Below are positions 9,243-60,318 of a stretch of DNA of 64,000 bases, piece after piece. Every line of letters starts with the position of its first letter. Position 1 is the stretch's first letter. The notes under the pieces are model-generated. The model had not been told where the DNA came from and made no database searches. It was given only the letters and a program-made list of their open reading frames with translations. Both the position numbers and the translations under genes were made by a program. The stretch covers positions 62,001-126,000 of IMG/VR virus record IMGVR_UViG_3300044701_000569; one strand, given 5' to 3'.

Positions 9243-9247
9243 ATAGT

Positions 9248-11179: not shown

Positions 11180-11591
11180 TCTACAACCGCAACGACTGTC
11201 AGGAGTTGTTAAAAAAGGCTGGGGCTATGAACTTATATGGGCAACTAACGAAAAGTATGCAGGCAAAATTCTTGCATTTGATCATGCAGGATCTAAAATG
11301 AGTATGCATTTCCATAGGCAAAAAGACGAAACATGGTTTGTTAACAGCGGAAAATTTCTAGTACGTTGGATTGATACAAACACTGCTAAGGTGAATGAAA
11401 AAGAATTAAATGAAGGCGATATTTGGCACAATCCTCCACTTCAACCTCACCAACTGATTGCTCTTGTTGACGGTGCCAGTATAACTGAAGTAAGTACTCC
11501 TGATTCTGTAGAAGACAATTATAGAATTTCTCCAGGTGACAGTCAAAAGGAACAAACTAAAGATGTCAAACCGGTACCTCCACAGTATTGA
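11166..11591 (+). CDS. Cupin-fold putative sugar(-phosphate) isomerase
   Basis: KGWGYELIW, SMHFHRQKDETW, PPLQPHQL and EVSTPD cupin metal-binding motifs. Confidence 0.75.
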   Translation: MEQTNLQPQRLSGVVKKGWGYELIWATNEKYAGKILAFDHAGSKMSMHFHRQKDETWFVNSGKFLVRWIDTNTAKVNEKELNEGDIWHNPPLQPHQLIALVDGASITEVSTPDSVEDNYRISPGDSQKEQTKDVKPVPPQY

Positions 11592-22043: not shown

Positions 22044-22625
22044 ATGCAATTTGACGAAATATTTCCTACCTATCTAGTTAAAGACATTAATTTAAAATTA
22101 GCAGAAAAACTATTACCTCTCTGCAATAGATACACAGATGAAACAAAAACTAATTGCCTTCATATAGAAAATTTTCCAAGTACGCTGTATGATAGAGATT
22201 TAGAACGTAAGGTTATGGATGAACCTGAGGTTAAAGAAGCGTTTGATATTATCATTGAGTCTTACTTGAAGCCGTTTTTAAATCATCGAGGTATAAATTT
22301 GCCACAGCCTTTAAAACCTTTTGGGTTTTTTAGTTCAATGAAAAAGCATGCTTATCTTAGAAAGCACTGTCATTTAGATTCTTTATTTGCTGGAATAATC
22401 TATTTAGAAGTAGGTAAAGAAGTGCCACCGTTAATTCTGTATGATCCTAAACCAATGAGATCGTTCATAAACTGGCCGTTGTTACCCAACAATACTAAAG
22501 ATACCCCTCTATTGGTTATACCCCCTCAACAAGGTTTAGTATTATTGTGGGACTCGTATTTAGAACACGAGGTTCCTCAAAAATTAAATGACGAACCTCG
22601 TAAAACTTTTGTCTTTAATCTTTAA
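22044..22625 (+). CDS. Putative 2OG-Fe(II) oxygenase
   Basis: HCHLDSLFAGIIYL, LILYDP, LEHEVP and RKTFVFN give the double-stranded beta-helix His/His/Arg pattern. Confidence 0.75.
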   Translation: MQFDEIFPTYLVKDINLKLAEKLLPLCNRYTDETKTNCLHIENFPSTLYDRDLERKVMDEPEVKEAFDIIIESYLKPFLNHRGINLPQPLKPFGFFSSMKKHAYLRKHCHLDSLFAGIIYLEVGKEVPPLILYDPKPMRSFINWPLLPNNTKDTPLLVIPPQQGLVLLWDSYLEHEVPQKLNDEPRKTFVFNL

Positions 22626-33462: not shown

Positions 33463-33490
33463 CTTATACTCCAGTATCCTTAGTTATTAA

Positions 33491-33498
33491 TATTTATC
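33491..33498 (-). promoter_or_regulatory. Late promoter box (GATAAATA)
   Basis: tatttatc upstream of the GGAG SD of the gene starting at 33462. Confidence 0.6.
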
Positions 33499-33500
33499 CA

Positions 33501-36500: not shown

Positions 36501-37481
36501 CTTAACTATGTCGCCAACTTTATAGCGTACAGCTTGTGCCCAGTCACCGATAAAATGTGTACCGTCATACACAGTGTCCCATTTTTCAATGTCAGCTTCT
36601 AATCCGCTTGACACTGTAGATGCACTGGTATGTCCTGTGTTGCATCTATAAACTATGCCACCGTATACTACTAGATCTCCTACTTTATATCTCGTACTAG
36701 TTAGCCAAACATTTTTCCAGTCTTCAGATTCAGTTACTTCTCTCCAGAAACGTTGATTGACTTCTAATCCTAGTGAAGCTAATATTGTTGAGGTATGGAT
36801 AGTTAAGCACTCGTATATTTTACCGCCATAACGTACTTTATCTCTTTCGTTGTAAAGTGTATTAAGTTGCCATGTGCCGCGCCAATGTGATCCTTCAAAC
36901 ATCAGCTCCCAAGTTGAACTTGTTGATGCAGCTATTGAGTTTCCGTAGCCTGTAGCAGCCTGTGACCAATAGTATAATGTGTTTGGAGTATCATCTTTAA
37001 TTTCAATCCTAACCTCTCTAAGACCAGCAGAAGAAAATCCTGAAACATATCCAGTAGCACTTACTTCAACATTGTCTAGATAATAAGTTACGTTTTTTGT
37101 ATAGTTACTGCCGCCGCCGTAAAATCCATTGGCTGTAGATGAAAAGTATAAAGGATGTTGACTTGCTGAAAAAGAAACGTTAGATGCATCATTTTGATTA
37201 AAAATATAAGGTCTACCCTTTTTAAGTGTTAAGTCAGGTCTTTCAACACCATTAATAAAAAACACATCAGCTGTGTCTGCTGTATTTCTAGCAACAGTTA
37301 CTACTAGATCTCTCGGTGTGCTACCAAAGTCAGTATAAAAAGCACTGCTCGAAGTATGCGAATCTAATGCTACATAGGCTTTGCCTGCATAATACACTAC
37401 ATCGTCTTTGGTATAGTCTGTAGCAGGTGCCCAGTTACCTGTCCATCTAAATTTAAGTCTATCTATTTTAAAATTAGCCAT
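33501..37481 (-). CDS. Giant fibre protein (1326 aa), paralogue of the 1824-aa protein
   Basis: Same N-terminal F(K)xxRxxFxW start, W-Y repeats, NKSPYIQNVTTFG and QVRLTGHDFLDIGTG domains. Confidence 0.75.
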   Translation of the reverse strand: MANFKIDRLKFRWTGNWAPATDYTKDDVVYYAGKAYVALDSHTSSSAFYTDFGSTPRDLVVTVARNTADTADVFFINGVERPDLTLKKGRPYIFNQNDASNVSFSASQHPLYFSSTANGFYGGGSNYTKNVTYYLDNVEVSATGYVSGFSSAGLREVRIEIKDDTPNTLYYWSQAATGYGNSIAASTSSTWELMFEGSHWRGTWQLNTLYNERDKVRYGGKIYECLTIHTSTILASLGLEVNQRFWREVTESEDWKNVWLTSTRYKVGDLVVYGGIVYRCNTGHTSASTVSSGLEADIEKWDTVYDGTHFIGDWAQAVRYKVGDIVKYGSTLWVANTEHTSTGFAANLANWTVYLEGLEFESIYDSSTYYQQGDVVWYGGYNYRAKQNNTNQNPVTASAYWQPVSERYTFDGDWAVGPAYEVGNVVRHRGYLYVAVADNTNEEPPNLSYWEIVSPSEAWRGLWITGISYKLGDLATYGSTTYVCKLAHTGSSPTRPDTDIAGSGTYWDVYVEGHSSNVLAAQGDILWYNSGAKDRFPKGSENELIKVSNGTTFDWDLFGNVSKVYYVATDGVDAAGRGTTLNEPWRTIKYACANITGPATIFIKTGVYEEELPISIPAGVALVGDELRSTIVQPAAGYESTDMFYVRNATGIRNMTLQGLFDTLSSPNEYFTQRPLNDVKFVSLDPGTGTGDSTVWITNKSPYIQNVTTFGTGCVGLKVDGSLHAGGNDSIVANDFTQVISDGIGCWITDLGRAELVSVFTYYCHVGYLATAGGKIRATNGNNSYGDYGSIAEGIDATETPITGSVNNRNFEAQIGYVFTDGDQILSLEYTNAGINYDSAAAYTFTGAGLNAAVSSANVVTNGIYEIRITDPYDSGTVGGTGYLIRQNYAQGGSGSSGTITLANSDESEESVYLGMKLVIISGAGVGQYGYISAYDPLTKIASISKESDDTSGWDHMLSGTPIVDPASTSRYQIEPRVIISVGTGTRATARVAIASGRIGSFRIINPGSGYLNQPTITVVDPNATSTGTWTARIGSGVLAQPTFSNRGTGYVTANATVTGVGLQDAFQTGSYIWVTGLTGQPGPGANVQFNGNSTVYRLVTIEDITGSLGNQSAKLRVSPRIDTYESPAHSSAITVRENYSQVRLTGHDFLDIGTGNFVETNYPGLPQNEPEAFRETNDAGGGRVFYTSTDQDGNFRVGELFKVEQATGIITLNADAFDLTGLTELRLGGVVLGGTGAVIREFSTDATLGANSNNIVPTQRALKTYIAAQIGGGGEDLNVSQLRAGQIIINNNQITSATGSIDFDAVARFTGGVEGSLLALAYFKR

Positions 37482-37492
37482 AGTTGTAACCT

Positions 37493-37870
37493 TTATTCTG
37501 TTCCGTCAGAGCTTATACCAGAAGGATATGTGTAAGCTGTATTCAATCTCATAACTAGATCACCGTCATCATTTATGTAGTAAAGAGCGTTTCTATCATC
37601 CCATCTGTACTGTTCATATACTAAGTTTTGATAAAGTAGGTCTCTGTCTTGATTTCGTCCTTCGAAGAAATCTTGACCTATTTCAAAATAAGGATAGTTG
37701 TCTTCTTCTGCACCGGGCTTGTTTACGCTAATTGAATCAGAATTATTTAATTGATCAACTTTACCAAAAAACAATTCTCCCTTGTCTGTTCTTCTAAATC
37801 CGTAGAAAAATCTGCTGCTGAGAGTAGCTGCTACAGAATCCGGAGTAAACCCAATATAATTTAATGACAT
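37493..37870 (-). CDS. Hypothetical virion-cluster protein
   Basis: 125-aa ORF tightly packed in the operon. Confidence 0.6.
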   Translation of the reverse strand: MSLNYIGFTPDSVAATLSSRFFYGFRRTDKGELFFGKVDQLNNSDSISVNKPGAEEDNYPYFEIGQDFFEGRNQDRDLLYQNLVYEQYRWDDRNALYYINDDGDLVMRLNTAYTYPSGISSDGTE

Positions 37871-37879
37871 AATTTTTCC

Positions 37880-38209
37880 TTATACGATATCTACGTAGCT
37901 TATCACAGCATCTAGCGCACTGTCTTGATCAGCCACCAACAACAATTGATTTAGCGGTGCTAGTATTAATTTTTCACCTGCACTTAATGCTCTTAAACTT
38001 GAGTGTGCTGGTATCATTACATCTCTAAGATAATAACCTTCAACACTGGTATCATCATGCACTAGAACACTTGCATAGACAATTCCAGAAGTTAAGTTAG
38101 CAAGACTTAGTCCAATTACAGTTGATCTTGTACCAGCATTAGTTTCAAGTGCAAGTATAGGTACTGTTCCTATTTCTTTAATTACTTTATTTTTAAACGT
38201 TGTTGCCAT
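37880..38209 (-). CDS. Small beta-sandwich virion adaptor protein
   Basis: MATTFKN, VIGLSLANL, AGEKLIL and VISYVDIV; similar to the ORFs at 27654 and 45212. Confidence 0.6.
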   Translation of the reverse strand: MATTFKNKVIKEIGTVPILALETNAGTRSTVIGLSLANLTSGIVYASVLVHDDTSVEGYYLRDVMIPAHSSLRALSAGEKLILAPLNQLLLVADQDSALDAVISYVDIV

Positions 38210-38213
38210 TCTT

Positions 38214-41200
38214 TTATCCTAATGTCAAAATATATTCAACTGCTAAATTTTCAGCGGCAGTAAAAGTAATAGCACCAGAACTACCTGCTACAGATACCCA
38301 ACTTACTCCGTCCCAGATTTCTAAATAGCTTTGATCAGTATTATATCTAACCATACCTAATTCTCTATACGGAGGAATAGGTCTTTCAGTATCTAAACCA
38401 ACTGGGACAACAAAACCTTTATTGCCCTCTATTTTAAAATAACCGGTACCACTGTTTCTAAAGTATGTTATACCGTTGTTAGTTCTATTTATAATAGATG
38501 AATCTTTAAATCCTAGTTCGTCAATAACAACTGAACCAATTCCATTAGCATTTAATAACAGATCTTGATTAAGTGTTGTAATACTAATAGTGTTATCGTC
38601 TATTGATATATCATCTACTTCAAATCTATCTGCTCTAAATCTAGCCGAAGTCATATCAGCAACTAAAGAGCCATCAGCATAAAATCTAATAGTATTATCA
38701 TTTGCACCAGGAGTTAATTCAGCAGTGATATAGGTGTTTAGATCTAAGTCGTAAACACCATTAAGTGCTATCCAATTTCCATCATACCCTTCAAACAGGT
38801 TAGTGTCAGTGTTGTATCTTATCATACCAACACTAGGTGTTCCTGGTCGTTCTGCTATAGATCCTGTGGGTAAATTAAATGCGCCCGTGGCATTTAATCT
38901 TACAGTTCCGCTAGCTGCATCTAGTATAATATCGCCTGTGGTGCTTGATATTGTATTGCCACTAATTACTAAATTACCAGTATTAATTTGTTCGCCAGTA
39001 ATTGTTGTTGTGCTAGCACCAGTTGTAATAGATATACCAGTACTAGTTTCAATATTAAATGTTGCACTAGTAAAGTTTACTGTACCCGTCTGTTGATCTA
39101 CAAAGAATAAATCACCAACTCTAAAATCACCATCATGATCAACTGAGCTATATCTTATTCTTGCATTGTTTAGTTCTATAACTTCGTTAGTTTGTATAAC
39201 AGTTAACGGATCGTTTGACGTTTCTTTTCCGTTACCTATATAAGCAAAGTTTTGACTAATTAGGTACATCAATACGCCCGGACCGTTTCCGTAAGCACCG
39301 TAATTTCCGTATACACAAGCACTGGCAATAGAACGAACCTCGCCACCAAAGTCAGTAAAGTCAACCAGTGTTATTGCTGTAGCAGTTGCGCCGCCACTAA
39401 ATCTAACATCCTGCACCTGTTGAGCATCGTCGTCAATAGTAATAGAGCTGTCTGTGCCGTTAAAATGTAGTAGCAGTACAGTGTATTGATCGCTTAGATA
39501 TTCTGCTGTAGGAACAGTAAAAGTACCTGAACTGCGGCCGCTACCTTTTGAAATTCTTACTTCGTCAATGCGTCCAGCAAATGCAAAACTTCCATTAGGG
39601 TCTGCACCTATTCTCACAGGGCGAGCTGCATAGCTATTAGCATCAACATAAGTAGAACCGACCTGTACGCCATTTATAAATGCTCGTGTATTGCCACTTA
39701 CTCTAGATAAACGCACATGTGTCCAAGTGCTAATAGGAACTGTTCCAACAGGGCCTATTCTAAAATTAAAATTGTAGTAGAAATAAAGCTGATTAGCATC
39801 TGTAAGACCTAAGACAATGCCGCCGCCATCACCGGGACTAGCAGTTCTTAGGTCAAAGATAGTTCTATACGTACCTGTTGTAGTTGGATACAACCATGCT
39901 TCTAAGCAAAAATCACCTGTACCAAATCCAAAATCAGCATGGGATGGATAAGAAATATAATCCCCTGTGCCATCAAGTTCTAAACTTGCTGTGCCAAACT
40001 TCTTAAGAGAAGTATCTAATCTAGCTTCATTTGCAATAGTTGCAGTCTTACCGGCTCTTTCAAGATAAGTTTCAAATCCCGTCTGCTTACCAGTTATATA
40101 AAATTTACCGTCAACGTCTTTACTTGCAATAGTACCTGTTGCTAGAACAGTTACTCCGTCAGTATCATAGTAGGTTACAGTTTCACCTGAATTAAATGTG
40201 CCTGTTACATTATCAACTCTTAGTGCTGTTTTACCTTGACCTTGTAGTCCTGTTGCACCATCAAAAGCGTACATGCCTCTGTTGGCAAAATATGTAAAGC
40301 AGTTGAGCCATTCAACTCTTGCACCGTTTGTAATTACCAGTGCATCTACACCGGGTGTGATAAAAGTTACTGAGTGAAATAAACAACTTGCTTCGCGTGA
40401 GCTTACACTAGCCACTGCACCATCAATGTACGCACCTTTGCCTGCATCACCCGCTGCAAATCCTCTAGGATCACTGCCGCTGGTTACAGAGCCTGATGTA
40501 ATAACTGATACGTTTCTAACATAAGGTGAACGACTGGTTACTGTAAATCCGGGCGCAAATTTAAACGCATATCCTGTAAAGAAATCTTTTACAGTTATGT
40601 CTTCAACTGTTACTTCACCGTTAAGTAGGAATGCGTCATTATTTTGTGTGGCAATGCTAGGCTTAATATTAACGCTTCTTAAACTGTGTCCTTTGACAGT
40701 TACGCCAGCTGGAACTGTAATTGGAAATGTTTCTGTATATGTTCCTGGATAAATGTGAATAGTATCACCAGCACCTGCTACTGTTACAGCGTGTGTTAGA
40801 CTAGCAAACGGAGCACTTGGATGATCACCGTCAAGCGAATCGCTTCCGTTTTCCGCAACATAGTAAATGTTACCCTGTCTTAGAGCTAGTTCTACTCCAT
40901 CAACTGTTAAGTTAGCGGTATTGATAGTTGCAGTGTCTGCATAGATATTATCTACATAGGCATTGCGCCATTGTTTGCCGCCTGTTGCTGGATCAGAACC
41001 TAGATCATAAGCATTTGAACTATCAGGAATTATGTTTGATACTATTTCAGCATTAAAGACTACATTATCAGTGTCTTGATTACCAATAGTAATGTTCCCG
41101 TCAGCAGTAATAGATCCTGTAGCTACTATGTTACCGTAAACATTTGTATCTGCAAATATCTCTACAGTACCTGTACCGTTTGGACGAAATTCTAAATTTT

Positions 41201-41552
41201 CATTGGATGTGTTTGTACTGATTATGTTATCTTCAATACTAACACTGTCAACAGTTAATTTGTTTTGATATACAACAGTATCAGCTGTACCTAACTCTAG
41301 TGTAGGCTGTGTTGTACTGATTGTGTTGCCTGAGAATGTAACATCAGCAATATTAGCTAATGTACTTACTGTTAGATTTGTACTGTAAACTGAACCGTTT
41401 ACATCTAGATCGTATTGAGGTGATGCTGTTCGTATACCGATACGGCTGTTGTTAACATCAAGATATAATAGATCAGTCTCAAAGGCCAGATTTACTCCCT
41501 CGCGAAGGAGGTTAGCCTTTAAGAGCGGACCACTAATACGACCAATAGCCAT
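38214..41552 (-). CDS. Fibre protein with beta-helix-like and LamG/ConA-like domains (1112 aa)
   Basis: GRISGPLL start, IYYVAENG, RSPYVRNVSV, FGTGDFCLEAW...GRIDEVRISKG and PxGxxxERP/GMIRYNTD motifs. Confidence 0.7.
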   Translation of the reverse strand: MAIGRISGPLLKANLLREGVNLAFETDLLYLDVNNSRIGIRTASPQYDLDVNGSVYSTNLTVSTLANIADVTFSGNTISTTQPTLELGTADTVVYQNKLTVDSVSIEDNIISTNTSNENLEFRPNGTGTVEIFADTNVYGNIVATGSITADGNITIGNQDTDNVVFNAEIVSNIIPDSSNAYDLGSDPATGGKQWRNAYVDNIYADTATINTANLTVDGVELALRQGNIYYVAENGSDSLDGDHPSAPFASLTHAVTVAGAGDTIHIYPGTYTETFPITVPAGVTVKGHSLRSVNIKPSIATQNNDAFLLNGEVTVEDITVKDFFTGYAFKFAPGFTVTSRSPYVRNVSVITSGSVTSGSDPRGFAAGDAGKGAYIDGAVASVSSREASCLFHSVTFITPGVDALVITNGARVEWLNCFTYFANRGMYAFDGATGLQGQGKTALRVDNVTGTFNSGETVTYYDTDGVTVLATGTIASKDVDGKFYITGKQTGFETYLERAGKTATIANEARLDTSLKKFGTASLELDGTGDYISYPSHADFGFGTGDFCLEAWLYPTTTGTYRTIFDLRTASPGDGGGIVLGLTDANQLYFYYNFNFRIGPVGTVPISTWTHVRLSRVSGNTRAFINGVQVGSTYVDANSYAARPVRIGADPNGSFAFAGRIDEVRISKGSGRSSGTFTVPTAEYLSDQYTVLLLHFNGTDSSITIDDDAQQVQDVRFSGGATATAITLVDFTDFGGEVRSIASACVYGNYGAYGNGPGVLMYLISQNFAYIGNGKETSNDPLTVIQTNEVIELNNARIRYSSVDHDGDFRVGDLFFVDQQTGTVNFTSATFNIETSTGISITTGASTTTITGEQINTGNLVISGNTISSTTGDIILDAASGTVRLNATGAFNLPTGSIAERPGTPSVGMIRYNTDTNLFEGYDGNWIALNGVYDLDLNTYITAELTPGANDNTIRFYADGSLVADMTSARFRADRFEVDDISIDDNTISITTLNQDLLLNANGIGSVVIDELGFKDSSIINRTNNGITYFRNSGTGYFKIEGNKGFVVPVGLDTERPIPPYRELGMVRYNTDQSYLEIWDGVSWVSVAGSSGAITFTAAENLAVEYILTLG

Positions 41553-41563
41553 CTCTTCTCCTC

Positions 41564-41660
41564 AATACGGGGATCCTGTCCCTCCAACCAAATTCTCATC
41601 CTTACGGCTCTTTGCTGGTTGACCACAGTTTGGTCCTGCGAGAGTTGGTCGCTCCTGCAT
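41564..41660 (-). promoter_or_regulatory. Structured 5' leader of about 100 nt (candidate cis-regulatory RNA)
   Basis: GC-rich non-coding stretch between a late box (41667-41674) and the SD, with several hairpins. Confidence 0.45.
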
Positions 41661-41666
41661 TAGTAG

Positions 41667-41674
41667 TATTTATC
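41667..41674 (-). promoter_or_regulatory. Late promoter box (GATAAATA)
   Basis: tatttatc on the plus strand just after the stop of the 996-aa gene. Confidence 0.6.
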
Positions 41675-41685
41675 GATTTTTGGAT

Positions 41686-44676
41686 TTAACCTAAGACAAG
41701 GGTGTAAATATCAAGAATTTCACCCATAAGTTCTGCAGTAACAATTTCGCCTTCGCCTGCTGATCTCTGCCACTCGCTGCCGTTCCAAGTTTCAAGATAG
41801 TCTCTGTCAGTATTCCAGCGTGTAGTTCCTTGTGGTGGAACTGAGGGACGTTCTACATCTGTACCTGTAGGAATTACTAGTCCCCGAACATTATCAAACA
41901 CTAGATAACCATTATTAGTATGACTAACACTTAGATTATTATTACTAGTATTATCTATAACATTATCGTATACAGCTAAATCATCAAAATATACAACTCC
42001 AGTTCCGTTAGCTTCTAGTTCTAAATTTGAATTAGAAGTTGATGTTGTAATTAGGTTATTCTGAATTAAAATATCTCCGGTATACAATCCAGTTAACTGT
42101 ATTGCACCTGGTATTACTCTACCTGCTTCTATGCTATTTGCAGTAAAAATAATGTGTCCTTGAAGGTTGTTAGCATTAATACTTGTATTTCTATTTTCAC
42201 TGAATACTCCATTAAAAGTAGTTGTAGTAGTACTATATCCTTCAAATCGTTGCGAAGTTGTATTATAACGTATATCCGACTGTTCAGATATACGCTGTGC
42301 TGTAGTTCCTCTAGGAAGTATTATATTTGAATTACTAGATACATTTAAAAAACCAGATCCAGGATTCCATATTAGGTCACCGTTTACTGTTACTACAGAA
42401 TTTCCGCTGAATCTAATATTACCTATATCAATGCGTTCGCCGTCAATGTAAGTAATTTCTCCGCCAGTGTTTATAACTATTGCACTTACGCCACTAAAGT
42501 CAATACTGCTAGCATCAATACTAGTTTCACCTGTATCAAAGTCTACGTAGAATACGTTCCCAACTCTAAATGTCCCTCTAGCATCTGTTGACACATAATA
42601 GATTTTTCCGCTGTTTAGTTCTACAGCTTCTTGATCTCTTAGCGTTAGCGTTGAATCGTTATTTGCTTCTGTGCCGGCGCCTATGTATGCAAAGTTTTGT
42701 CCTATTAGATACATCAGCGTGTCTGCACCGTCTGCTACAGCACCGTAATTTCCGTATACACTGGCCGATCCAATAGAACGAATTTCTGCTCCAAACTCTG
42801 TGCCTAAATTTGCAAAGCCTGCTGATCCCTGTAGTGCATACAATCCTCTGTTTGCAAAATATGTAAATGAGTTAAGCCATTCTACCCTCACGCCATTTGT
42901 CATAGTAATACAATCAACACCTGGAGTTATAAATGTAGCACTGTGAAACAGCATACTTGCTTGTGTGCTGGCACTGTTTAATTCACTACCGTCAATCCAT
43001 GCTCCGGCTCCTGCTGGAATCGCAGACGTTGTTGCAGGAGAAGAAAAAATTGGAATTCCTGAAGCAGGAACTAAAGACGTAGTTACATATATTCTCCACA
43101 TGTTAGTATTAATAGGATCTTCAATTACGTAATCTACAACATAAAGAACACCGTTATTATTAATAGACCAATCTGCGCCAACTACAGTATTAAAATCTGA
43201 AGGTAAGTTAGTTTTATAATAAGCTACCCAAGGTTCTCCAACAGAAGCTCCTGTAGTATCATAGTCATTAGGTGGAAGAATAAAAGTTGTTCCGCTAGGA
43301 TATATGGAAAAAGAATAACCTTGCTGCAAGGAATCGAACGGTTCAGCTAAAATAAGATTCCATAACGTTGTTGGATCTGCCGGTGACGGTTCGTATCCTG
43401 TGATTGTATAAAACGTAACAGGAGATAAAGGACCAAAATGAGTTGCCATTGTTTTTCCAACCCAGCTTTGCACTAGTGCTTCGCTATGTCCAGATTTAGT
43501 TACAGTTATTCCATATGTGTCGAAAGATAGGCCGAGGCCTTCTGGATCAACATAAACTTCTCCAGGCGCAGTTGACGCTGCTGTTTCTGCTGTTATAACA
43601 CTTACGTTTCTTACATACGGGCTACGTTCATTAATAATTGCTCCAGAAGCAAATCTAAATGCATAGCCTGTGTTATTTCCGCTATCAAACGTAAAATCTC
43701 TAACAGTTATATTTTCAACTAGAGTATTTTGATTTAAATGAAATATGTCTTCGCCCTGACTAGCAGTGTTTGGACTTATTATTGTATTCCTTAAATCTTC
43801 GCCAGTGATAGTTGTATTCTGTGGAACTATTAGAGGAGTAGTTTCTTCATACTCTCCGGGATAGATATGTATTGTTACAGGGCCTGCTGTGCTGCCGTCT
43901 GCGACTGCAAGAGCATGGGCTATTGTTCTAAACGGACCTTGAGGATGATCACCTACATTTGTGTCATCACCATTTACGGCAACAAAAAAAGTGTTGCCTG
44001 GTCTAGTTGCTAGACTAGCATCTTCAACAACTACAACATTAGATACTAAGTTATTACCAATTAAATTGTTGGTATATAAATTTCTCCAACGTTTTACACT
44101 AGTACCTAAGTCGTAGGTTGACGTAGCATCTGGTATAATGTGGCTGTTAATATCTGCATTAAAATCTACACTGTCAGTATTGTCATTACCTAAAGTTAAT
44201 GTTCCGCCAAAAGTTATATCGCCTGTTGCGTGTAAACTTCCAGTAACATTTGTATTAGCATGTATTTCTAATGTACCAGTACCGTCGGGTCTAATTTCTA
44301 CATTAGAATTAGGTACAGTGGTACCAATAGAATTAAAATTTATATCAAGATCGTCTGTGCGAAGATTAGATAATTTAATTTGATTAGCTGCATTTAAAAA
44401 CATGTTGCCTGGTGCAACATTAATTGCTCCAGACTGTATTGTAAAATTAGCAACTTTTAAGTCTACGTCTTGTATTAGATGACTGGCGCCCAGCGTAGTT
44501 GCTACTTCAAGAACATCTATAGGACTTTCAGTATTAACACCAATTCTAGCTGTGTTTACTTTGAGCTGTAGTAATGCAGTGTCTAGTGTTTCGTTTTTAA
44601 AATTTAAATCAACACCGTTTCTTACAAGGTTGTCTTGTAAAACTCCACCACTGATTCTACCTATTTGCCCTGCCAT
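41686..44676 (-). CDS. Fibre protein (996 aa), paralogue of the 1112-aa protein
   Basis: GRISGGVL start, RSPYVRNVSV, SMLFHSATFITPGVD and RVEWLNSFTYFANRG shared with the downstream paralogue. Confidence 0.7.
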   Translation of the reverse strand: MAGQIGRISGGVLQDNLVRNGVDLNFKNETLDTALLQLKVNTARIGVNTESPIDVLEVATTLGASHLIQDVDLKVANFTIQSGAINVAPGNMFLNAANQIKLSNLRTDDLDINFNSIGTTVPNSNVEIRPDGTGTLEIHANTNVTGSLHATGDITFGGTLTLGNDNTDSVDFNADINSHIIPDATSTYDLGTSVKRWRNLYTNNLIGNNLVSNVVVVEDASLATRPGNTFFVAVNGDDTNVGDHPQGPFRTIAHALAVADGSTAGPVTIHIYPGEYEETTPLIVPQNTTITGEDLRNTIISPNTASQGEDIFHLNQNTLVENITVRDFTFDSGNNTGYAFRFASGAIINERSPYVRNVSVITAETAASTAPGEVYVDPEGLGLSFDTYGITVTKSGHSEALVQSWVGKTMATHFGPLSPVTFYTITGYEPSPADPTTLWNLILAEPFDSLQQGYSFSIYPSGTTFILPPNDYDTTGASVGEPWVAYYKTNLPSDFNTVVGADWSINNNGVLYVVDYVIEDPINTNMWRIYVTTSLVPASGIPIFSSPATTSAIPAGAGAWIDGSELNSASTQASMLFHSATFITPGVDCITMTNGVRVEWLNSFTYFANRGLYALQGSAGFANLGTEFGAEIRSIGSASVYGNYGAVADGADTLMYLIGQNFAYIGAGTEANNDSTLTLRDQEAVELNSGKIYYVSTDARGTFRVGNVFYVDFDTGETSIDASSIDFSGVSAIVINTGGEITYIDGERIDIGNIRFSGNSVVTVNGDLIWNPGSGFLNVSSNSNIILPRGTTAQRISEQSDIRYNTTSQRFEGYSTTTTTFNGVFSENRNTSINANNLQGHIIFTANSIEAGRVIPGAIQLTGLYTGDILIQNNLITTSTSNSNLELEANGTGVVYFDDLAVYDNVIDNTSNNNLSVSHTNNGYLVFDNVRGLVIPTGTDVERPSVPPQGTTRWNTDRDYLETWNGSEWQRSAGEGEIVTAELMGEILDIYTLVLG

Positions 44677-44700
44677 TTAGGTCTCCTTTGACAGTAGTAT

Positions 44701-45210
44701 TTATTTGTCAAAGTTGTGGATTACAGTTACGTCTTTTCCGAATGGAACTGCTGTACCAAACTCGATATACCATCCTTCTGCTTTTCCTGGAGGATTCTGC
44801 GCTAAGGAATAGTTTGTTCCTGGAATTTGATAAACGTTTTCTACAAATACTAAAATATTTCTTTCTGTAGCAGGTATAGGATAATCTGCATCGCCTGAAT
44901 TTAGTATACCAAATACAGTTTCAATTGCGTCACCTGGGCCAAATGTTTGCTGCACTATACCTGGATTTCTGTTTGGTTCTTTAAATCTTAGTTTTCTCCA
45001 AGCACCGTCTTGATAAGCTTCTACTTCATCTGTAGTTGTATTATATCTTAGATGTCCGTCAGTTGGGTAAAATGGTCGTTCAGATGTTGAACCTTTAGGA
45101 AGTCTAATAGAATTATTAGAATCCATAATTATTTGATCATTAGTGTCAAAGTGAACACCCTTGCCTGATAGGCTTCTTAAATTTGTACTTTGACGCTTTA
45201 AAAATCTCAT
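44701..45210 (-). CDS. Virion structural protein
   Basis: LPKGSTSERP / GHLRYNTT fibre motif and VFVENVYQIPG beta domain. Confidence 0.6.
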   Translation of the reverse strand: MRFLKRQSTNLRSLSGKGVHFDTNDQIIMDSNNSIRLPKGSTSERPFYPTDGHLRYNTTTDEVEAYQDGAWRKLRFKEPNRNPGIVQQTFGPGDAIETVFGILNSGDADYPIPATERNILVFVENVYQIPGTNYSLAQNPPGKAEGWYIEFGTAVPFGKDVTVIHNFDK

Positions 45211-45211
45211 G

Positions 45212-45550
45212 TTATACTTCCAAATAACTCACAGTTGCAGAAAGATTTGTAGGTGATTCACCTAAAAGAATTATACGGTCACCTTCTTCTAAAATAATTT
45301 TTTCAGAATCAAATGTGAAAGTTTCTCCTGCGGGTAGAAGCAAATTTCTAACTACCATGTTTACATTACCTTTGGCTTGTCCGTTAGGTACTAAGTGCAT
45401 ATCAAAACTAGTCAATCCGTCTTCTTCGTGTCCTGGATTTGGTGTCCAAGTATTGCAGACTAGGATTGTTGTGATAGCATATCGTTTGCCTACAGGAACT
45501 TCTAAAAGTTCTGTGTCAATATTTGTTACTAATACGTTTGCTATTGCCAT
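45212..45550 (-). CDS. Small beta-sandwich virion adaptor protein
   Basis: AITTILVCN, LPAGETFTFDSEKIILEEGD and ATVSYLEV. Confidence 0.6.
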   Translation of the reverse strand: MAIANVLVTNIDTELLEVPVGKRYAITTILVCNTWTPNPGHEEDGLTSFDMHLVPNGQAKGNVNMVVRNLLLPAGETFTFDSEKIILEEGDRIILLGESPTNLSATVSYLEV

Positions 45551-45559
45551 TGTCTGTCC

Positions 45560-46534
45560 TTAAAATATCATACTGTAAATAAGAGATCTGTTGTTACTTA
45601 TAATTTCGTCTCTTCTTAATTCTGCATTTACAAAAAATAATCCTGTTCCTCCGGTGGATTCATTTTTAACATAAAGTTTTAAACCGTCTGTTGAAATTGG
45701 AGGAACAACTGAAGGATCATCAGGACTAGGCAAATAATTTATCTGCAAAGTGTCGTCAACTACTATATGACCTAACCCGGGAGCAGATAGAACTAAATTT
45801 TCATCTGACGCTGTGGTTTCAATCCTAGTACCAACAATTCTAATATTTCCTAACTCAAATCTATCAGCATAGATATTAGCTACTACATTAGTATCAATAG
45901 CAATTTCTATTCTGCTAGCAGTTCCTGTAGTTTCACTGTCAAGTGCTTTTACAGTCGTTGGATCTATAACACCATCACCAATCTGTGTTAATAGTGTACT
46001 AGCAAAAGCTAAAGTAATTGCATCATCAACATATTTTTTATTTGTTATATGATCATCATCGGTAACATTTGTTTCGTAGTTATTAGTGCCTTCTACGCTA
46101 ATAACTCCTGAACCTGCATTAATTAAAAATAAATCACCGCCACCTGTGCTAATGCTGTTTGTTCTAATGCCTACTAGCGTTGATAGATCATTCCTAAAAA
46201 TAAATCCGCCAGTTACTGTTGTATCTGATACAGGGTCTCTCCAAGTTACATTTTCATCAAACAAAATGTAAGCATCTGGTTGTACTCCTCTATCAATCCT
46301 TATACCTGATGTGTCTAAAGTTATTCCTGATCCTGTTTCACCAGCGTTAAGAAGGATAATGTTATCAGTGACAGACATATCAGTTGACTCAACCGTAGTT
46401 GTAGTTCCTTCAACTAATAAATTACCTGTGATTATCACAGTGCCTTCACCTGAACCTGTATTCAAAACGATTTCATCACCAGGTTCAACTGATATCTTAT
46501 AACCGCCTTCTGTAACTCTTAAAAATTTAGACAT
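45560..46534 (-). CDS. Virion structural / fibre-root protein
   Basis: GNLLVEGTTTTVES...DNIILLN, NKKYVDD coil motif and hydrophobic C-terminus RSLIYSMIF. Confidence 0.6.
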   Translation of the reverse strand: MSKFLRVTEGGYKISVEPGDEIVLNTGSGEGTVIITGNLLVEGTTTTVESTDMSVTDNIILLNAGETGSGITLDTSGIRIDRGVQPDAYILFDENVTWRDPVSDTTVTGGFIFRNDLSTLVGIRTNSISTGGGDLFLINAGSGVISVEGTNNYETNVTDDDHITNKKYVDDAITLAFASTLLTQIGDGVIDPTTVKALDSETTGTASRIEIAIDTNVVANIYADRFELGNIRIVGTRIETTASDENLVLSAPGLGHIVVDDTLQINYLPSPDDPSVVPPISTDGLKLYVKNESTGGTGLFFVNAELRRDEIISNNRSLIYSMIF

Positions 46535-46550
46535 TCATTGTTCCTATAAG

Positions 46551-46572
46551 GTAAGGGGATTTCTCCCCTTAC
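46551..46572 (-). terminator. Hairpin after the 147-aa gene
   Basis: GUAAGGGGA-GAAA-UCCCCUUAC on the minus strand; no clear U-tract. Confidence 0.45.
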
Positions 46573-46574
46573 TA

Positions 46575-47018
46575 TTAGATAGCTGTTAATCGCATTACAG
46601 TTTCTGTCGAGTCGTTCTCAATAGTCCACTTGTATCTTGCGTTGTTGAAATCTCTACAAGTACGATTGAATAGTTTCTTAATACGAACCTGTGTACCACC
46701 AGTACCAACAATAGTACCTTGTATTGACATTTCATTAGCTGCTAAAGAACCAACAGCTTTGTCAACTAGTGTGCAAATTCCTACGTTACCTGTACCAGAA
46801 CCGCTTGGTGTTACCTTAGTACCTGCTTTAGTATCGTTTACTAAAAACTTGTTTGAACTACGCTGTCTTAAAATGTAGCCTTCGTCGCTAGCAGAGTTGC
46901 TGGCAACTTTTACGTTTACTGTGATGTTAAAAAAAGTTTCGTTTGATGCTGGTGCATAACGTGTATCGTCAGCGTCTGCTAACCAACCAAAGAATTTCTT
47001 ATTTACTGGACGTCCCAT
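46575..47018 (-). CDS. Hypothetical late protein
   Basis: MGRPVNKKFFG start, strong AAGGAG SD and its own late box at 47086. Confidence 0.7.
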   Translation of the reverse strand: MGRPVNKKFFGWLADADDTRYAPASNETFFNITVNVKVASNSASDEGYILRQRSSNKFLVNDTKAGTKVTPSGSGTGNVGICTLVDKAVGSLAANEMSIQGTIVGTGGTQVRIKKLFNRTCRDFNNARYKWTIENDSTETVMRLTAI

Positions 47019-47085
47019 TTGTTTTCTCCTTTATGTTGACGTTCTAGGTCTACGCAGTGGGTAACTGCATAAGTCTTAGACAAAG

Positions 47086-47093
47086 TATTTATC
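47086..47093 (-). promoter_or_regulatory. Late promoter box (GATAAATA)
   Basis: tatttatc immediately downstream (minus sense) of the pqqA terminator. Confidence 0.6.
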
Positions 47094-47102
47094 ATAAAAG
47101 AT

Positions 47103-47128
47103 AAAAGCCCAACAATGTTGGGCTTTTT
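47103..47128 (-). terminator. Bidirectional intrinsic terminator after pqqA
   Basis: aaaagcccaac-aat-gttgggctttt perfect stem with U-tracts on both strands. Confidence 0.85.
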
Positions 47129-47142
47129 AAAAGAACTATAGT

Positions 47143-47214
47143 TTATCTGTTAGCAATATACATTGTAACTTCAAAACCATAGCGCATTTCTGTTGCTACT
47201 GGTTTGGTCCACAT
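47143..47214 (-). CDS. pqqA: Pyrroloquinoline quinone precursor peptide PqqA (23 aa)
   Basis: Manual translation [23 protein letters not shown] has the MWxKP start and the GFEVTxY core with the E-x3-Y cross-link residues. AGGAGG SD at 47223-47228, 8 nt before the ATG. Too short for the ORF track. Confidence 0.93.
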
Positions 47215-47237
47215 AATGTTTTCCTCCTTTGCACTAT

Positions 47238-47245
47238 TAATTATA
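47238..47245 (-). promoter_or_regulatory. Promoter box for pqqA (TATAATTA)
   Basis: Perfect TATAAT -10 at 47240-47245 that also reads as a late-box variant; no good -35 seen. Confidence 0.5.
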
Positions 47246-47299
47246 CACAGTTATAGTAGGAAAAACATACGTAAAATCATTAAAATATCATCAGTCAAA

Positions 47300-47325
47300 G
47301 AAATAGGGCCTTTCGGCCCTATTTC
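47300..47325 (-). terminator. Intrinsic terminator after the major capsid gene
   Basis: GAAAUAGGGCC-GAAA-GGCCCUAUUUC-UUU on the minus strand. Confidence 0.85.
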
Positions 47326-47349
47326 AATTTGCTTACCTAACAGGTAGTA

Positions 47350-48525
47350 TTATCTGAAGCTTACGCTTGAAGAAGTAATACCAACAGTTGCTAGGTAGTC
47401 TGCTGCGTTACCAAGTGACGAAGCTGTGTTGGTTAGCTCAACATAACCATAACGTGTCATAAAGCTGACAGTTGGTTCGAATGTTGATGGATCTAGTACA
47501 ACACCGCTGCTCATCAATGGAATGTATGGGCAGTAGAATGCTGGAGCATCAGATTCTGAAGTTCCCTTGTAACCAATGATAACGTTAGCATTGTCAGCAG
47601 CATAAGTGTTGACATATACCTTCATTGCATTGTTTAGAGTACCAACTAGCTTTGTGTTAGTTGGAGCTTCAAACGTACCTTCTGTAGTACGTGCAAATGC
47701 TGATGTTGTTGCGCTCTGTAGAATTGTTAGTGCAAATGGTGAAACTACAGCGTAGTTACCAGCACCACGACGTGTACGCTGAGCGATTAGGTTTGCTGCA
47801 CGGTTGATTTGAACAGCTAGTGCAGCATGCTCGTCACCAACAAATGTAGCAGTACCGCTAACAGCAGTCTGGTCGTATGTTTCTACAGCAGCACCAGCTA
47901 GAGTGTTTAGCGAAGCTAACACTTCCTGGTCGATTTCAGCTGTAATTTCTTGAGCAAGAGCAGCCATAATTTCTGCTTCTACGTCGATGCCATGCATAGA
48001 CTGTGCGTCTTGTGCAGCTTCGAAAGTCCAACGTGCGCTGAGCTTACGAGTCTTGGCTTCAACTGTTTGCTTCAAGATTTGAATGCTTAGTCTGTTACCA
48101 GCAACACCTTCTAGCGCAGCAGTTGCGTCTGCCTTAGCTGTTGAAGTATTGCCTGAATAGGCTTCAGCAATCTTAAATGGGCTTAGAGCTTCTTCACCTG
48201 CAACTGCACCTGAAGCGCCTGAGCCTGCTGTGTCCGCATAGCGAACACGTAGAGTGTGGATTTGACCCACGGGTCCTGTCATTGGCTGAACACCAACTAA
48301 CTCGTTAGCAATAACGGTTGGCATCACACGACGGATGACTGGTAGGATAACACGGTTTAGTGTTGCGACATTACCGGCAGAAGTAGCACCAGCAGTAGCA
48401 CTTTCTGCAAGATACCTACGGGTATTTTCCAGTGTAGTGGCCATTACTGACTTTTTGTTGCCTTGAAGGCCTTCAAGAAGTGCTGCTTTTGTATCCTGCC
48501 AGCGACTTTCTAGTAGTTCTGACAT
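47350..48525 (-). CDS. gp23: Major capsid protein (gp23-like, 391 aa)
   Basis: VRRVMP-like segment, GVQPMTGPVGQI, VEAKTRKLSARWTFEAAQD, EIDQEV, FYCPYIPL and MTRYG motifs. Confidence 0.97.
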   Translation of the reverse strand: MSELLESRWQDTKAALLEGLQGNKKSVMATTLENTRRYLAESATAGATSAGNVATLNRVILPVIRRVMPTVIANELVGVQPMTGPVGQIHTLRVRYADTAGSGASGAVAGEEALSPFKIAEAYSGNTSTAKADATAALEGVAGNRLSIQILKQTVEAKTRKLSARWTFEAAQDAQSMHGIDVEAEIMAALAQEITAEIDQEVLASLNTLAGAAVETYDQTAVSGTATFVGDEHAALAVQINRAANLIAQRTRRGAGNYAVVSPFALTILQSATTSAFARTTEGTFEAPTNTKLVGTLNNAMKVYVNTYAADNANVIIGYKGTSESDAPAFYCPYIPLMSSGVVLDPSTFEPTVSFMTRYGYVELTNTASSLGNAADYLATVGITSSSVSFR

Positions 48526-59877: not shown

Positions 59878-60318
59878 TTAAGTGTTGGTATGATTTGCCT
59901 GTTCTAGAAGTGCCTTACGCAATTTATCGGAACCGCCCACTCTACAATTAATAATTCCGTTATAATATTCATCCGTCTCTAACACACGGCGGTCAAATTG
60001 CTCTCTTGCCTCGATATATGACATTTCTGCCTTGGAAGTGCAGTAGTAAAGTATTTCTCTAGTGAAGTTTTCTGGACCTAATTGTGCAACGTCAGCGTTG
60101 AGTCTATCGGATGAACCCCAATAATCACGCCAGTCGCTTTCTACAGTGGAACGCCTTTTGAGTTTTTTGCCTTTTAGCGGAGGTTTTGTACGTTTGAATT
60201 GTGCAAGTTTTTTGCCTATGTACTTTTGTCCAGTTTTTAGATTGGTTATAAGGTAAACAAAGCCTATTTTGCCTTCTGGTATTTGTTCAACGATGTTACC
60301 TTGATAAGTCCACTGCAT
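59878..60318 (-). CDS. GIY-YIG (Seg-like) nuclease
   Basis: GFVYLITNLKTGQKYIGKK, YWGSS, FTREIL, EAREQF and YYNG motifs. Confidence 0.85.
   Translation of the reverse strand: MQWTYQGNIVEQIPEGKIGFVYLITNLKTGQKYIGKKLAQFKRTKPPLKGKKLKRRSTVESDWRDYWGSSDRLNADVAQLGPENFTREILYYCTSKAEMSYIEAREQFDRRVLETDEYYNGIINCRVGGSDKLRKALLEQANHTNT

What the first reader, a model, noticed from the sequence alone, without database searches (positions are those of the whole stretch)
47103..47325. Phage-encoded PQQ precursor peptide (pqqA) as an insulated mini transcription unit behind the capsid gene
Seen: a 23-codon ORF at 47143-47214 (-), [23 protein letters not shown], invisible to the ORF track. It has a perfect AGGAGG SD and a TATAAT box, and lies between the capsid terminator (47300-47325) and its own terminator (47103-47128). 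Known: PqqA is the ribosomal precursor whose Glu and Tyr (E-x3-Y) are cross-linked by PqqE/PqqD and excised to make PQQ. It is consumed stoichiometrically, and PQQ is the cofactor of methanol (MxaF/XoxF), alcohol and glucose dehydrogenases. No pqqB-E occur in this window. Inference: the phage supplies only the consumable substrate of a host peptide-derived cofactor pathway, to sustain periplasmic oxidation and energy during infection. From memory the ATEMR segment resembles Methylophilaceae PqqA, which would point to a methylotroph host. An alternative is a decoy that occupies PqqD/PqqE. I cannot confirm whether this has been described before.
Basis: partly seen in the sequence, partly recalled or inferred. 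Interest (0 to 1): 0.92.

Follow-up and report, generated by a model that had tools for sequence, protein, structure and literature searches.

The report
Phage-borne PQQ precursor gene cassette

Summary
Window 47143-47214 (-) is a 23-codon ORF that passes both curated PqqA models (Pfam 32 bits, cut-off 21; TIGR02107 35 bits, cut-off 20). It has an AGGAGG site, a TATAAT box and a hairpin on each side. It sits between the Gp23 capsid gene and the next late gene, at a hotspot where relatives carry nothing or other inserts.

Four relatives in this lineage hold pqqA at the same hotspot, one of them inverted. The same peptide type occurs in at least 120 IMG/VR contigs. It also occurs, unannotated, in all ten cultured Methylophilales/Methylophilaceae phage records that a peptide search of the phage collection returned. 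Every copy is intact and under purifying selection. None lies next to pqqB. Cellular matches are mostly Methylophilaceae.

Best explanation: a moron-type auxiliary gene that resupplies the consumed PqqA precursor to the host's PqqB-E enzymes. This is inferred, not shown.

The concept is not new: Coutinho et al. 2020 reported viral PqqA in Lake Baikal. New here are the breadth, the cassette's mobility, a conserved upstream operator-like motif, and placement of the Rfam "freshwater-2" RNA directly downstream.

The parts
47350..48525 (-). Major capsid protein gene (Gp23 family), the upstream neighbour
   Evidence: Pfam PF07068 Gp23, 329 bits. 68-70% nt identity to the capsid genes of 121Q/PBECO4-type jumbo phages.
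47300..47325 (.). GC-rich hairpin after the capsid gene. It folds on both strands, and in relative L162 the equivalent hairpin also lies directly after the stop codon of an inverted pqqA.
   Evidence: -21.6 kcal/mol (- strand) and -20.2 kcal/mol (+ strand), z about -7. Listed by the terminator scan. Conserved position in relatives.
47271..47283 (-). Upstream motif TTAATGATTTTAC, operator-like; its TAATGATT core starts 37 nt before the -10 box
   Evidence: Occurs once in the window with no mismatch. Present upstream of pqqA in 35 non-redundant phage copies, with a good -10 hexamer at offset 37-38 in 19 of them.
47240..47245 (-). TATAAT, the -10-like box of the pqqA unit
   Evidence: Read. Its fixed spacing to the motif is shared across phage lineages.
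47223..47228 (-). AGGAGG ribosome-binding site, 8 nt before the ATG
   Evidence: Read. 95% of 111 non-redundant phage copies have an SD-like site.
47143..47214 (-). pqqA: 23 codons plus stop, with W2, K4, P5 and the E15-x3-Y19 cross-link pair
   Evidence: both HMMs above cut-off. Identical in the independent contig L326.
47103..47127 (-). Intrinsic-terminator-like hairpin of the pqqA unit
   Evidence: 11-bp stem with a T-rich tail. -15.1 kcal/mol, z -5.2.
47085..47093 (-). GATAAATAC box, a T4-late-promoter-like element for the next gene and the right-hand boundary of the insert
   Evidence: 4 copies in the window, all on the - strand within about 20-115 nt upstream of - strand gene starts. Expected 0.84, and 0 of 100 shuffles reach 4. 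Conserved in relatives that lack pqqA.
47016..47094 (-). Rfam RF02980 'freshwater-2' cis-regulatory RNA motif, the conserved 5' leader of the next gene
   Evidence: 55.7 bits against a gathering score of 49.9. Also found in relative L130 at 66 bits.
46575..47018 (-). 147-aa late gene of unknown function, the downstream neighbour
   Evidence: Homologues follow the capsid gene in relatives at distances of 142-1767 nt. No Pfam or NCBIfam family.

Best explanation
The window comes from a large T4-like (Gp23/Gp20) myovirus. An independent, 99%-identical metagenome contig of at least 156 kb carries the same region. Between the capsid gene's terminator and the late promoter and leader of the next gene sits an insert of about 200 nt. 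It is a complete transcription unit: an upstream operator-like motif, a -10 box, a strong ribosome-binding site, a 23-codon pqqA and a terminator. The peptide is a genuine PqqA of the type found mostly in Methylophilaceae.

The most likely mechanism has four steps. (1) Host RNA polymerase transcribes the unit on its own; this is inferred from the promoter architecture and from the fact that one relative carries the cassette inverted relative to the capsid gene. (2) The peptide is translated (inferred). (3) The host's own PqqD/PqqE, PqqB, PqqC and peptidases convert it to PQQ (inferred from conservation of the leader and of the Glu-x3-Tyr pair). (4) This keeps PQQ-dependent methanol dehydrogenase loaded, and so keeps energy flowing, while host gene expression declines (inferred).

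Only the precursor is carried because it is the one component consumed one-for-one. It is also tiny, and hosts already keep it as stand-alone promoter-gene-terminator units that are easy to capture.
For: Identity: PF08042 and TIGR02107 both match above their cut-offs.

Phage context: Gp23 capsid, T4 portal, gp15, tail sheath and SegE-like endonuclease.

Insert at a hotspot: the gap between the capsid gene and the next gene ranges from 142 to 1767 nt in relatives. The shortest gaps contain only the terminator plus the GATAAATAC box and leader.

Modular mobility: pqqA occurs at this hotspot in L162/L163 (inverted), L194 and L094, in different orders relative to another small insert.

Selection: 110 unique phage alleles are all intact. 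P5, N22 and the stop position never vary, although the search pattern did not enforce them. pN/pS is 0.31 on the 10 unenforced codons. For copies found without the pqqA pattern, pS is 0.58-0.73 against pN 0.14-0.18.

Recurrence: a peptide search of 50,697 phage records returned pqqA in all ten cultured Methylophilales/Methylophilaceae phage records it hit. These are Melnitz x4 (Kyanoviridae), MEP401/402 (Zobellviridae), and Venkman, MEP301 and P19250A. At least 120 IMG/VR contigs also carry it.

Not host contamination: 0 of 94 viral copies are followed by pqqB, against 21 of 92 host copies.

Host link: of the 80 listed genome hits, 62 are named Methylophilaceae or Methylophilales and one is named for another family. 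The commonest host allele is also the commonest viral allele.

Specificity: no IMG/VR contig has the Pseudomonas/Acinetobacter-type core, and a positive control confirmed the search pattern works.

Precedent: a viral PqqA alongside a viral methanol dehydrogenase in Lake Baikal. Methylotrophs keep several stand-alone pqqA copies whose expression tracks PQQ output.
Against: There are no expression, translation or PQQ data.

From general knowledge, PQQ is a stable, tightly bound cofactor that methylotrophs excrete, so it is not obvious that it becomes limiting within one latent period.

Only three of the 80 closest capsid relatives carry the gene at this site (a fourth carrier came from the pqqA scan), so it is dispensable for the lineage.

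The window's allele is not close to any sampled host allele: at most 20 of 23 residues and 60 of 72 nt. Its IANR tail was seen among cellular genomes only in high-GC MAGs, so its fit to the true host's PqqD/E is unverified.

The rest of the phage genome was not seen, so other PQQ-related genes may exist outside the window.

The viral and genome samples were drawn with a pattern that fixes the core residues, so conservation of the core within those samples is not independent evidence.
Confidence: 0.7

Rival explanations
1. Decoy or inhibitor: the phage peptide occupies PqqD/PqqE without yielding PQQ, shutting down or redirecting host cofactor synthesis.
For: It is an orphan gene with no pqqB-E nearby. 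The window's allele has an unusual Y12 and an IANR tail compared with low-GC Methylophilaceae alleles.
Against: Glu and Tyr and the whole core are retained. Many viral alleles are identical in amino acids to the commonest host allele (32 viral against 47 host copies). A decoy would be expected to lose or alter the cross-linking residues. Hosts themselves keep most copies as orphans (71 of 92).
Confidence: 0.06
2. Neutral passenger: a piece of host DNA (a stand-alone pqqA unit) picked up by illegitimate recombination at a recombination-prone intergenic hotspot, with no benefit to the phage.
For: The site is a hotspot holding many different inserts. Only a few relatives carry pqqA there. Host orphan copies are ready-made units, 90% of them with a terminator.
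Against: All 110 unique phage alleles are intact, with pN well below pS. The window's allele is far from any sampled host allele, so it is not a recent capture. The gene is kept in at least four unrelated phage families, including all ten cultured Methylophilales-phage records returned by the peptide search. A phage-typical upstream motif is held at fixed spacing.
Confidence: 0.1
3. The peptide is made into PQQ, but for a phage-encoded PQQ enzyme (such as a viral methanol dehydrogenase elsewhere in the genome) or for another PQQ role, and not to sustain the host's own dehydrogenase.
For: The Lake Baikal viruses encode both methanol dehydrogenase and PqqA. Only 64 kb of a genome of at least 156 kb was seen.
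Against: No PQQ-dependent dehydrogenase is in this window. The small cultured phages (35-44 kb) carry pqqA, and the papers describing them list no such enzyme among their AMGs.
Confidence: 0.1
4. A DNA- or RNA-level element and not a coding gene: an attachment-site core, a recombination handle or a small regulatory RNA that happens to overlap a PqqA-like frame.
For: Short host-identical sequences in phages are often attachment sites. The Melnitz copy lies next to a tRNA gene.
Against: Variation is codon-like: third positions are near saturation while the amino acids are kept. The start codon, SD and stop are always present. No long exact identity to any sampled host copy was found. The carrier is a T4-like myovirus, and no integrase was found among the ORFs scanned.
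Confidence: 0.03

Closest known systems
Viral PqqA in Lake Baikal T4-like Methylophilaceae viruses (population VP_266; Coutinho et al. 2020, Microbiome, PMC7678222)
   Same: A phage-encoded PqqA precursor peptide in T4-like viruses predicted to infect Methylophilaceae, proposed as an auxiliary gene that boosts methanol oxidation.
   Different: That report is one annotated gene in one metagenomic population, next to a viral methanol dehydrogenase. Here the gene is alone in the window, lies in a lineage whose capsid is closest to 121Q/PBECO4-type jumbo phages, and is a defined mobile cassette at a capsid-proximal hotspot. It also turns out to be present in all the cultured Methylophilales-phage records found, which that paper did not examine.
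Stand-alone extra pqqA copies of methylotrophs (five copies in a Hyphomicrobium strain per PMC9851590; Methylovorus sp. MP688 per its cited Ge et al. 2015)
   Same: A 23-aa peptide of the same type, with its own promoter and terminator and no adjacent pqqB. 71 of 92 sampled host copies are orphans.
   Different: The phage copies have a distinct upstream arrangement: the TTAATGATTTT motif lies 37 nt before the -10 box and 49-94 nt before the ATG. That arrangement is seen in 2 of 118 host copies within the same distance. Fewer phage copies have a terminator (45% against 90%).
Cyanophage psbA (D1 protein), a functional analogy only
   Same: A phage carries the fast-consumed component of the host's central energy-harvesting machinery so that energy supply outlasts host shut-off (general knowledge).
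   Different: A different protein family and pathway. PqqA is a sacrificial substrate, not a subunit. psbA's role has experimental support, whereas phage pqqA has none.
Phage morons (self-contained promoter-gene-terminator inserts between conserved phage genes)
   Same: An independent transcription unit inserted between two genes that are adjacent in relatives, variable in presence and orientation.
   Different: Classical morons are described mainly in temperate lambdoid phages. This one is in the late structural region of a large T4-like phage.

Membership tests
PqqA (PF08042 / TIGR02107) | Match to the curated family models above their cut-offs | tested here: met
   Pfam 32 bits against 21.1; TIGR02107 (equivalog) 35 bits against 20.
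PqqA (PF08042 / TIGR02107) | Small peptide of about 20-30 residues with the Glu-x3-Tyr pair that becomes PQQ | tested here: met
   23 residues with E15-V-T-M-Y19.
PqqA (PF08042 / TIGR02107) | N-terminal leader (W-x-K-P) used for recognition by PqqD | tested here: met
   W2, K4 and P5 are present. P5 is invariant in 110 phage alleles although the search pattern did not enforce it. Actual binding is not testable here.
PqqA (PF08042 / TIGR02107) | Located at the head of a pqqBCDE operon | tested here: not met
   No pqqB-E in the window. This is not strictly defining: 71 of 92 host copies are also orphans.
PqqA (PF08042 / TIGR02107) | Cross-linked by PqqE/PqqD and converted to PQQ | not testable with these tools
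   Needs complementation or an in vitro assay.
Phage auxiliary metabolic gene | Encoded inside a genuine phage genome, not in host contamination | tested here: met
   Flanked by Gp23 capsid, portal, sheath and gp15 genes. An independent 156-kb contig carries the identical cassette. No viral copy lies next to pqqB.
Phage auxiliary metabolic gene | Close homologue of a host metabolic gene, kept under purifying selection | tested here: met
   Same allele types as Methylophilaceae. pN/pS about 0.2-0.3.
Phage auxiliary metabolic gene | Expressed during infection and changes host metabolism | not testable with these tools
   No transcriptome or metabolite data.
Moron | Own promoter and terminator, inserted between genes that are adjacent in relatives | tested here: met
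   Terminator folds. -10 box plus conserved upstream motif. Relatives with 142-175-nt gaps lack any insert. Promoter activity itself is untested.
Rfam RF02980 freshwater-2 RNA (the neighbouring element) | Covariance-model score above the gathering threshold | tested here: met
   55.7 bits against 49.9 at 47016-47094 (-).
Fur box (candidate identity of the upstream motif) | Match to the 19-bp Fur consensus and binding by Fur | tested here: inconclusive
   Host versions are palindromic (CTAATGATTTTCATTAG type). They share the arms of the E. coli Fur consensus as I recall it, which is a lead and not a test. Phage versions keep mainly one half-site. No binding data.

The most novel reading that the evidence does not exclude
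pqqA is the signature auxiliary gene of phages that infect Methylophilaceae, the methylotroph counterpart of cyanophage psbA. It is carried by unrelated phage families (a T4-like Kyanoviridae phage, Zobellviridae podoviruses, the smaller 35-39-kb phages Venkman, MEP301 and P19250A, and this large myovirus with a 121Q/PBECO4-like capsid). It behaves as a roughly 200-nt mobile cassette whose conserved operator-like motif, at a fixed 37 nt from the -10 box, ties its expression to a host regulator, possibly an iron-sensing Fur-type protein.
Probability: 0.4. Interest if true: 0.7.

Novelty: new member of a known kind. Interest (0 to 1): 0.5.

Why it matters
Methylophilaceae (OM43 in the sea, LD28 and Methylotenera in lakes) are major consumers of methanol and other one-carbon compounds. 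If their phages routinely resupply the consumed precursor of the methanol dehydrogenase cofactor, then phage infection directly shapes one-carbon oxidation in natural waters. Cultured phage-host pairs already exist (Venkman or Melnitz on H5P1, MEP301, MEP401/402, P19250A) in which this could be tested. On the practical side, the gene is missed by standard annotation because it has only 23 codons, so AMG surveys undercount it, and it could serve as a host-prediction marker for methylotroph phages. The finding also gives a genomic home to the orphan Rfam motif freshwater-2: the 5' leader of the gene that follows the capsid gene in a large freshwater phage lineage.

Tried and rejected
- Megablast of 20 kb of the window against 50,697 phage records found nothing, so the phage has no close cultured relative.
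- The consensus promoter scan found no -35/-10 pair on the pqqA strand. The promoter call therefore rests on comparative evidence.
The PDB sequence search gave no hit.
- Single-linkage clustering of the viral loci by shared proteins lumped 120 of 126 loci into one component and could not count lineages. I used the taxonomy of the cultured phages instead.
- Two transcriptome papers on Methylophilaceae/OM43 gave no statement on pqqA expression.
- I considered that the upstream motif might be a general promoter of this phage. I rejected this because it occurs only once in the window.
- I considered that the motif was exclusive to phages. I rejected this too: about a dozen host copies carry a palindromic version 110-170 nt upstream of pqqA, with the upstream neighbouring genes mostly on the same strand, so the box belongs to pqqA's own upstream region.
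- I considered 'Acinetobacter phage MD-2021a' as a non-methylotroph phage carrying pqqA. I rejected it because the record is a bacterial pqqABCDE locus.
- A PqqA tree for host assignment was not built: 23 residues, about half of them invariant, give no resolution. I used allele types and GC content instead.
- The attachment-site reading was rejected because of the codon-like variation and the lack of any exact host identity.

Full report
**1. The observation.**
- AGGAGG lies 8 nt before the ATG (47223-47228), and TATAAT lies at 47240-47245.
- Downstream, an 11-bp GC-rich hairpin with a T-rich tail (47103-47127) folds at -15.1 kcal/mol (z -5.2).
- Upstream, behind the capsid gene, a hairpin at 47300-47325 folds at -21.6 kcal/mol (z -6.9).
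- The simple consensus scan did not call a -35/-10 pair on this strand.
- The peptide passes both curated PqqA models: Pfam PF08042 at 32 bits (cut-off 21.1) and the TIGR02107 equivalog at 35 bits (cut-off 20).
- It has W2, K4, P5 and the E15-x3-Y19 pair.
- An independent 156-kb metagenome contig (L326, Ga0315909_10000045) is 99% identical to window 33105-48170 and carries the identical cassette and flanks. The cassette is therefore not an assembly artefact.

**2. The carrier.**
- The upstream gene is a Gp23-family major capsid protein (329 bits).
- The window also encodes a T4-type portal, a gp15-like sheath stabiliser, a tail sheath, a baseplate protein, a SegE-like GIY-YIG endonuclease and a dNMP kinase.
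- The capsid gene is 68-70% identical in DNA to those of the 121Q/PBECO4-type jumbo phages, but nothing in 50,697 phage records matches by megablast.
- GC content is 34-42%.
- None of the 47 ORFs of 90 aa or more hits a PQQ-related family, and tblastn with a host PqqB finds nothing.

**3. Anatomy of the site.** I fetched the 80 best of at least 600 IMG/VR capsid relatives (82-93% amino-acid identity).
- The distance from the capsid stop to the homologue of the next gene (the 147-aa protein at 46575-47018) ranges from 142 to 1767 nt.
- In the shortest versions the gap holds only three things: the capsid terminator; a GATAAATAC box; and a conserved leader that ends at the ribosome-binding site.
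- Other relatives have different small ORFs, or a structured RNA-like segment, inserted between the terminator and that box.
- In the window the insert is the pqqA unit, roughly 47094-47292.
- The GATAAATAC box occurs four times in the window, always on the minus strand within about 20-115 nt upstream of a minus-strand gene start. The chance expectation is 0.84, and 0 of 100 shuffles reach 4. It resembles the T4 late promoter TATAAATA (my own knowledge).
- The conserved leader is the Rfam motif RF02980 'freshwater-2' (55.7 bits against 49.9 at 47016-47094; 66 bits in relative L130).

**4. pqqA in relatives.**
- Only three of the 80 capsid-relative loci have pqqA behind the capsid gene. L162 and L163 (identical peptide and coordinates) carry it on the opposite strand, with the capsid terminator directly after its stop codon. 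L194 carries it on the same strand, after another small ORF.
- A fourth relative, L094, has it on the same strand before that other small ORF.
- The window's allele is no closer to these than to alleles in unrelated phages (pS 0.65-0.73).
- So the cassette is an accessory module that has entered, or been shuffled within, the same hotspot more than once.

**5. pqqA in other phages.**
- A DNA search with the region matched pqqA at 83-88% identity in cultured phages of Methylophilales.
- A tblastn search with the peptive against all phage records hit Melnitz x4 (Kyanoviridae), Venkman, MEP301, P19250A, MEP401 and MEP402 (Zobellviridae), and one uncultured freshwater virus. Every hit covers at least 96% of the peptide, and intact ORFs were read directly in Melnitz, Venkman, MEP301, P19250A, MEP402 and the uncultured virus.
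- None is annotated as pqqA. In Melnitz the annotated 'hypothetical protein' lies on the opposite strand.
- The only other hits, 'Acinetobacter phage MD-2021a', are a bacterial pqqABCDE operon in a mislabelled record.
- A pattern for the Pseudomonas/Acinetobacter-type core found none, and a positive control confirmed that the pattern works.

**6. Coding constraint.**
- 110 unique phage DNA alleles all keep the start codon, P5, N22 and the stop position, none of which the search pattern enforced.
- On the ten unenforced codons pN/pS is 0.31.
- For copies found without the pqqA pattern, pS is 0.58-0.73 and pN 0.14-0.18 against the window.
- 95% of 111 non-redundant phage copies have an SD-like site, and 45% have a strict terminator-like hairpin within 90 nt.

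**7. Host link.**
- The same pattern in one genome per species gave at least 120 loci. Of the 80 listed, 62 are named Methylophilaceae or Methylophilales genera, 17 carry only higher-rank names and one is an Acidovorax MAG.
- Host and phage share allele types, and the commonest host allele is also the commonest viral allele.
- In hosts, 21 of 92 copies are followed by PqqB (TIGR02108, 385 bits). In viral contigs, 0 of 94 are.
- Caveat: the window's allele matches no sampled host allele better than 20 of 23 residues. Its IANR tail was seen in cellular genomes only in MAGs with 59-68% GC, while low-GC Methylophilaceae end in VMNK or VCNK.
- With a phage GC of 39%, a shared promoter motif and DNA similarity to Methylophilales-phage copies, a Methylophilaceae host is likely (I estimate about 0.7) but not proven. 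The freshwater-2 motif points to a freshwater setting.

**8. A shared upstream element.**
- The sequence tTAATG(A/G)TTtt(c/a)nn(t/g)AT lies 49-94 nt before the ATG in the window, in MEP301, P19250A and Melnitz, in all pqqA-bearing relatives of this lineage, and in 37 of 116 IMG/VR copies. It occurs within the same distance in only 2 of 118 host copies.
- In 19 of 35 non-redundant phage cases a good -10 hexamer starts 37-38 nt after the motif, with no more than 3 at any other offset. The sequence between the motif and the -10, and to the left of the motif, is unrelated between lineages.
- The motif occurs only once in the window.
- About a dozen host copies carry a palindromic version (CTAATGATTTTCATTAG type) 110-170 nt upstream, mostly with same-strand upstream neighbours, so it belongs to pqqA's own upstream region.
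- I read it as a binding site for a host regulator that the phage cassettes keep in a compact geometry.
- Its arms match the E. coli Fur-box consensus as I remember it. That is a lead, not a test.

**9. Mechanism.**
- Shown by sequence: a bona fide PqqA gene; its own translation and termination signals; its insertion at a hotspot; its recurrence in unrelated phages of one host family; purifying selection; and the absence of the pathway enzymes.
- Inferred: transcription by host polymerase independent of late read-through (supported by the inverted copy in L162); translation; processing by host PqqD/E, B, C and peptidases; and the benefit (keeping PQQ-dependent methanol dehydrogenase supplied while host expression declines).
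- The reasoning for carrying only pqqA is that the peptide is the one component consumed stoichiometrically (established PQQ biochemistry; see the references listed). Methylotrophs themselves multiply stand-alone pqqA copies whose expression tracks PQQ output.
- The decoy, neutral-passenger, other-use and DNA-element readings are each disfavoured, as set out under the rival explanations.

**10. Comparison with what is known, and novelty.**
- Coutinho et al. 2020 (PMC7678222) already reported a viral PqqA, together with a viral methanol dehydrogenase, in T4-like Lake Baikal viruses assigned to Methylophilaceae, and proposed the same role. So the concept is known.
- In the searchable literature, the papers on Venkman, Melnitz, MEP301 and MEP401/402 do not mention a phage pqqA.
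- What this analysis adds:
  - (a) a new carrier lineage, with the insert boundaries defined;
  - (b) evidence that the gene moves as a cassette, in both orientations, within one hotspot;
  - (c) its presence in all ten cultured Methylophilales-phage records that the peptide search returned, across at least four phage groups;
  - (d) a conserved operator-like motif at fixed spacing;
  - (e) the placement of the freshwater-2 RNA.
- I file it as a new member of a known kind, with interest 0.5.

Noticed in passing
window 47016-47094 (-); L130 5556-5639: The Rfam orphan motif RF02980 'freshwater-2' is the conserved 5' leader of the 147-aa gene that follows the capsid gene in this phage lineage (55.7 and 66 bits against a gathering score of 49.9). 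This gives the motif a genomic home in a large freshwater phage.
   Followed up: partly
window 973-981, 6165-6173, 41666-41674, 47085-47093 (all -): GATAAATAC occurs four times, always within about 20-115 nt upstream of a minus-strand gene start (expected 0.84; 0 of 100 shuffles reach 4). It resembles the T4 late promoter TATAAATA. Rfam models this box as part of the first stem of freshwater-2, which may be a misreading of a promoter.
   Followed up: partly
window 47271-47283 (-); L002, L004, L001, L094, L162, L194 and about 35 IMG/VR loci: The upstream motif tTAATGATTTT(c/a)nn(t/g)AT sits at a fixed 37-38 nt from the -10 box of phage pqqA cassettes. Palindromic versions lie 110-170 nt upstream of about a dozen host pqqA copies. 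It resembles a Fur box, but the regulator is unknown.
   Followed up: partly
window 8787-12183 (+): A cluster of sugar-nucleotide genes: NUDIX, cytidylyltransferase-like, PfkB kinase, NAD-dependent epimerase, cupin and a HAD phosphatase. It looks like an ADP-heptose-type pathway. The cytidylyltransferase and PfkB ORFs overlap (9248-9646 and 9555-10361), like a split HldE.
   Followed up: no
window 22044-24421: A carbamoyltransferase (NodU/CmcH type, 599 aa) lies next to a 2OG-Fe(II) oxygenase. These are possible modification or auxiliary genes.
   Followed up: no
window 59878-60318 (-): A SegE-like GIY-YIG homing endonuclease (120 bits) lies beside an SbcC/gp46-like ATPase gene.
   Followed up: no
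window 27988-37481 (-) and 12174-19154 (-): Two giant ORFs (1824 and 1326 aa) carry repeated CBM_5_12 carbohydrate-binding modules and are probably fibres. A 2326-aa ORF has no Pfam match at all.
   Followed up: no
window 43015-43592 against L326 4579-4598: The 99%-identical contig L326 lacks about 577 nt inside the 996-aa fibre-like gene (41686-44676). This is strain-level length variation in a likely host-recognition protein.
   Followed up: no
L162 5380-5670; L130 5230-5540: In some relatives the same hotspot holds a GC-richer, structured, non-coding-looking segment of about 250 nt, with its own TTGAC...TATA-type promoter and terminator. It has no Rfam match and may be a phage small RNA.
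   Followed up: partly
L001 (Melnitz MZ577097) 2989-3063; L334 (CAKLQF020000010.1): Two database issues. Melnitz gene 152 ('hypothetical protein') is annotated on the strand opposite the real pqqA. The records named 'Acinetobacter phage MD-2021a' contain a bacterial pqqABCDE operon with ppk and are not phage DNA at that locus.
   Followed up: yes
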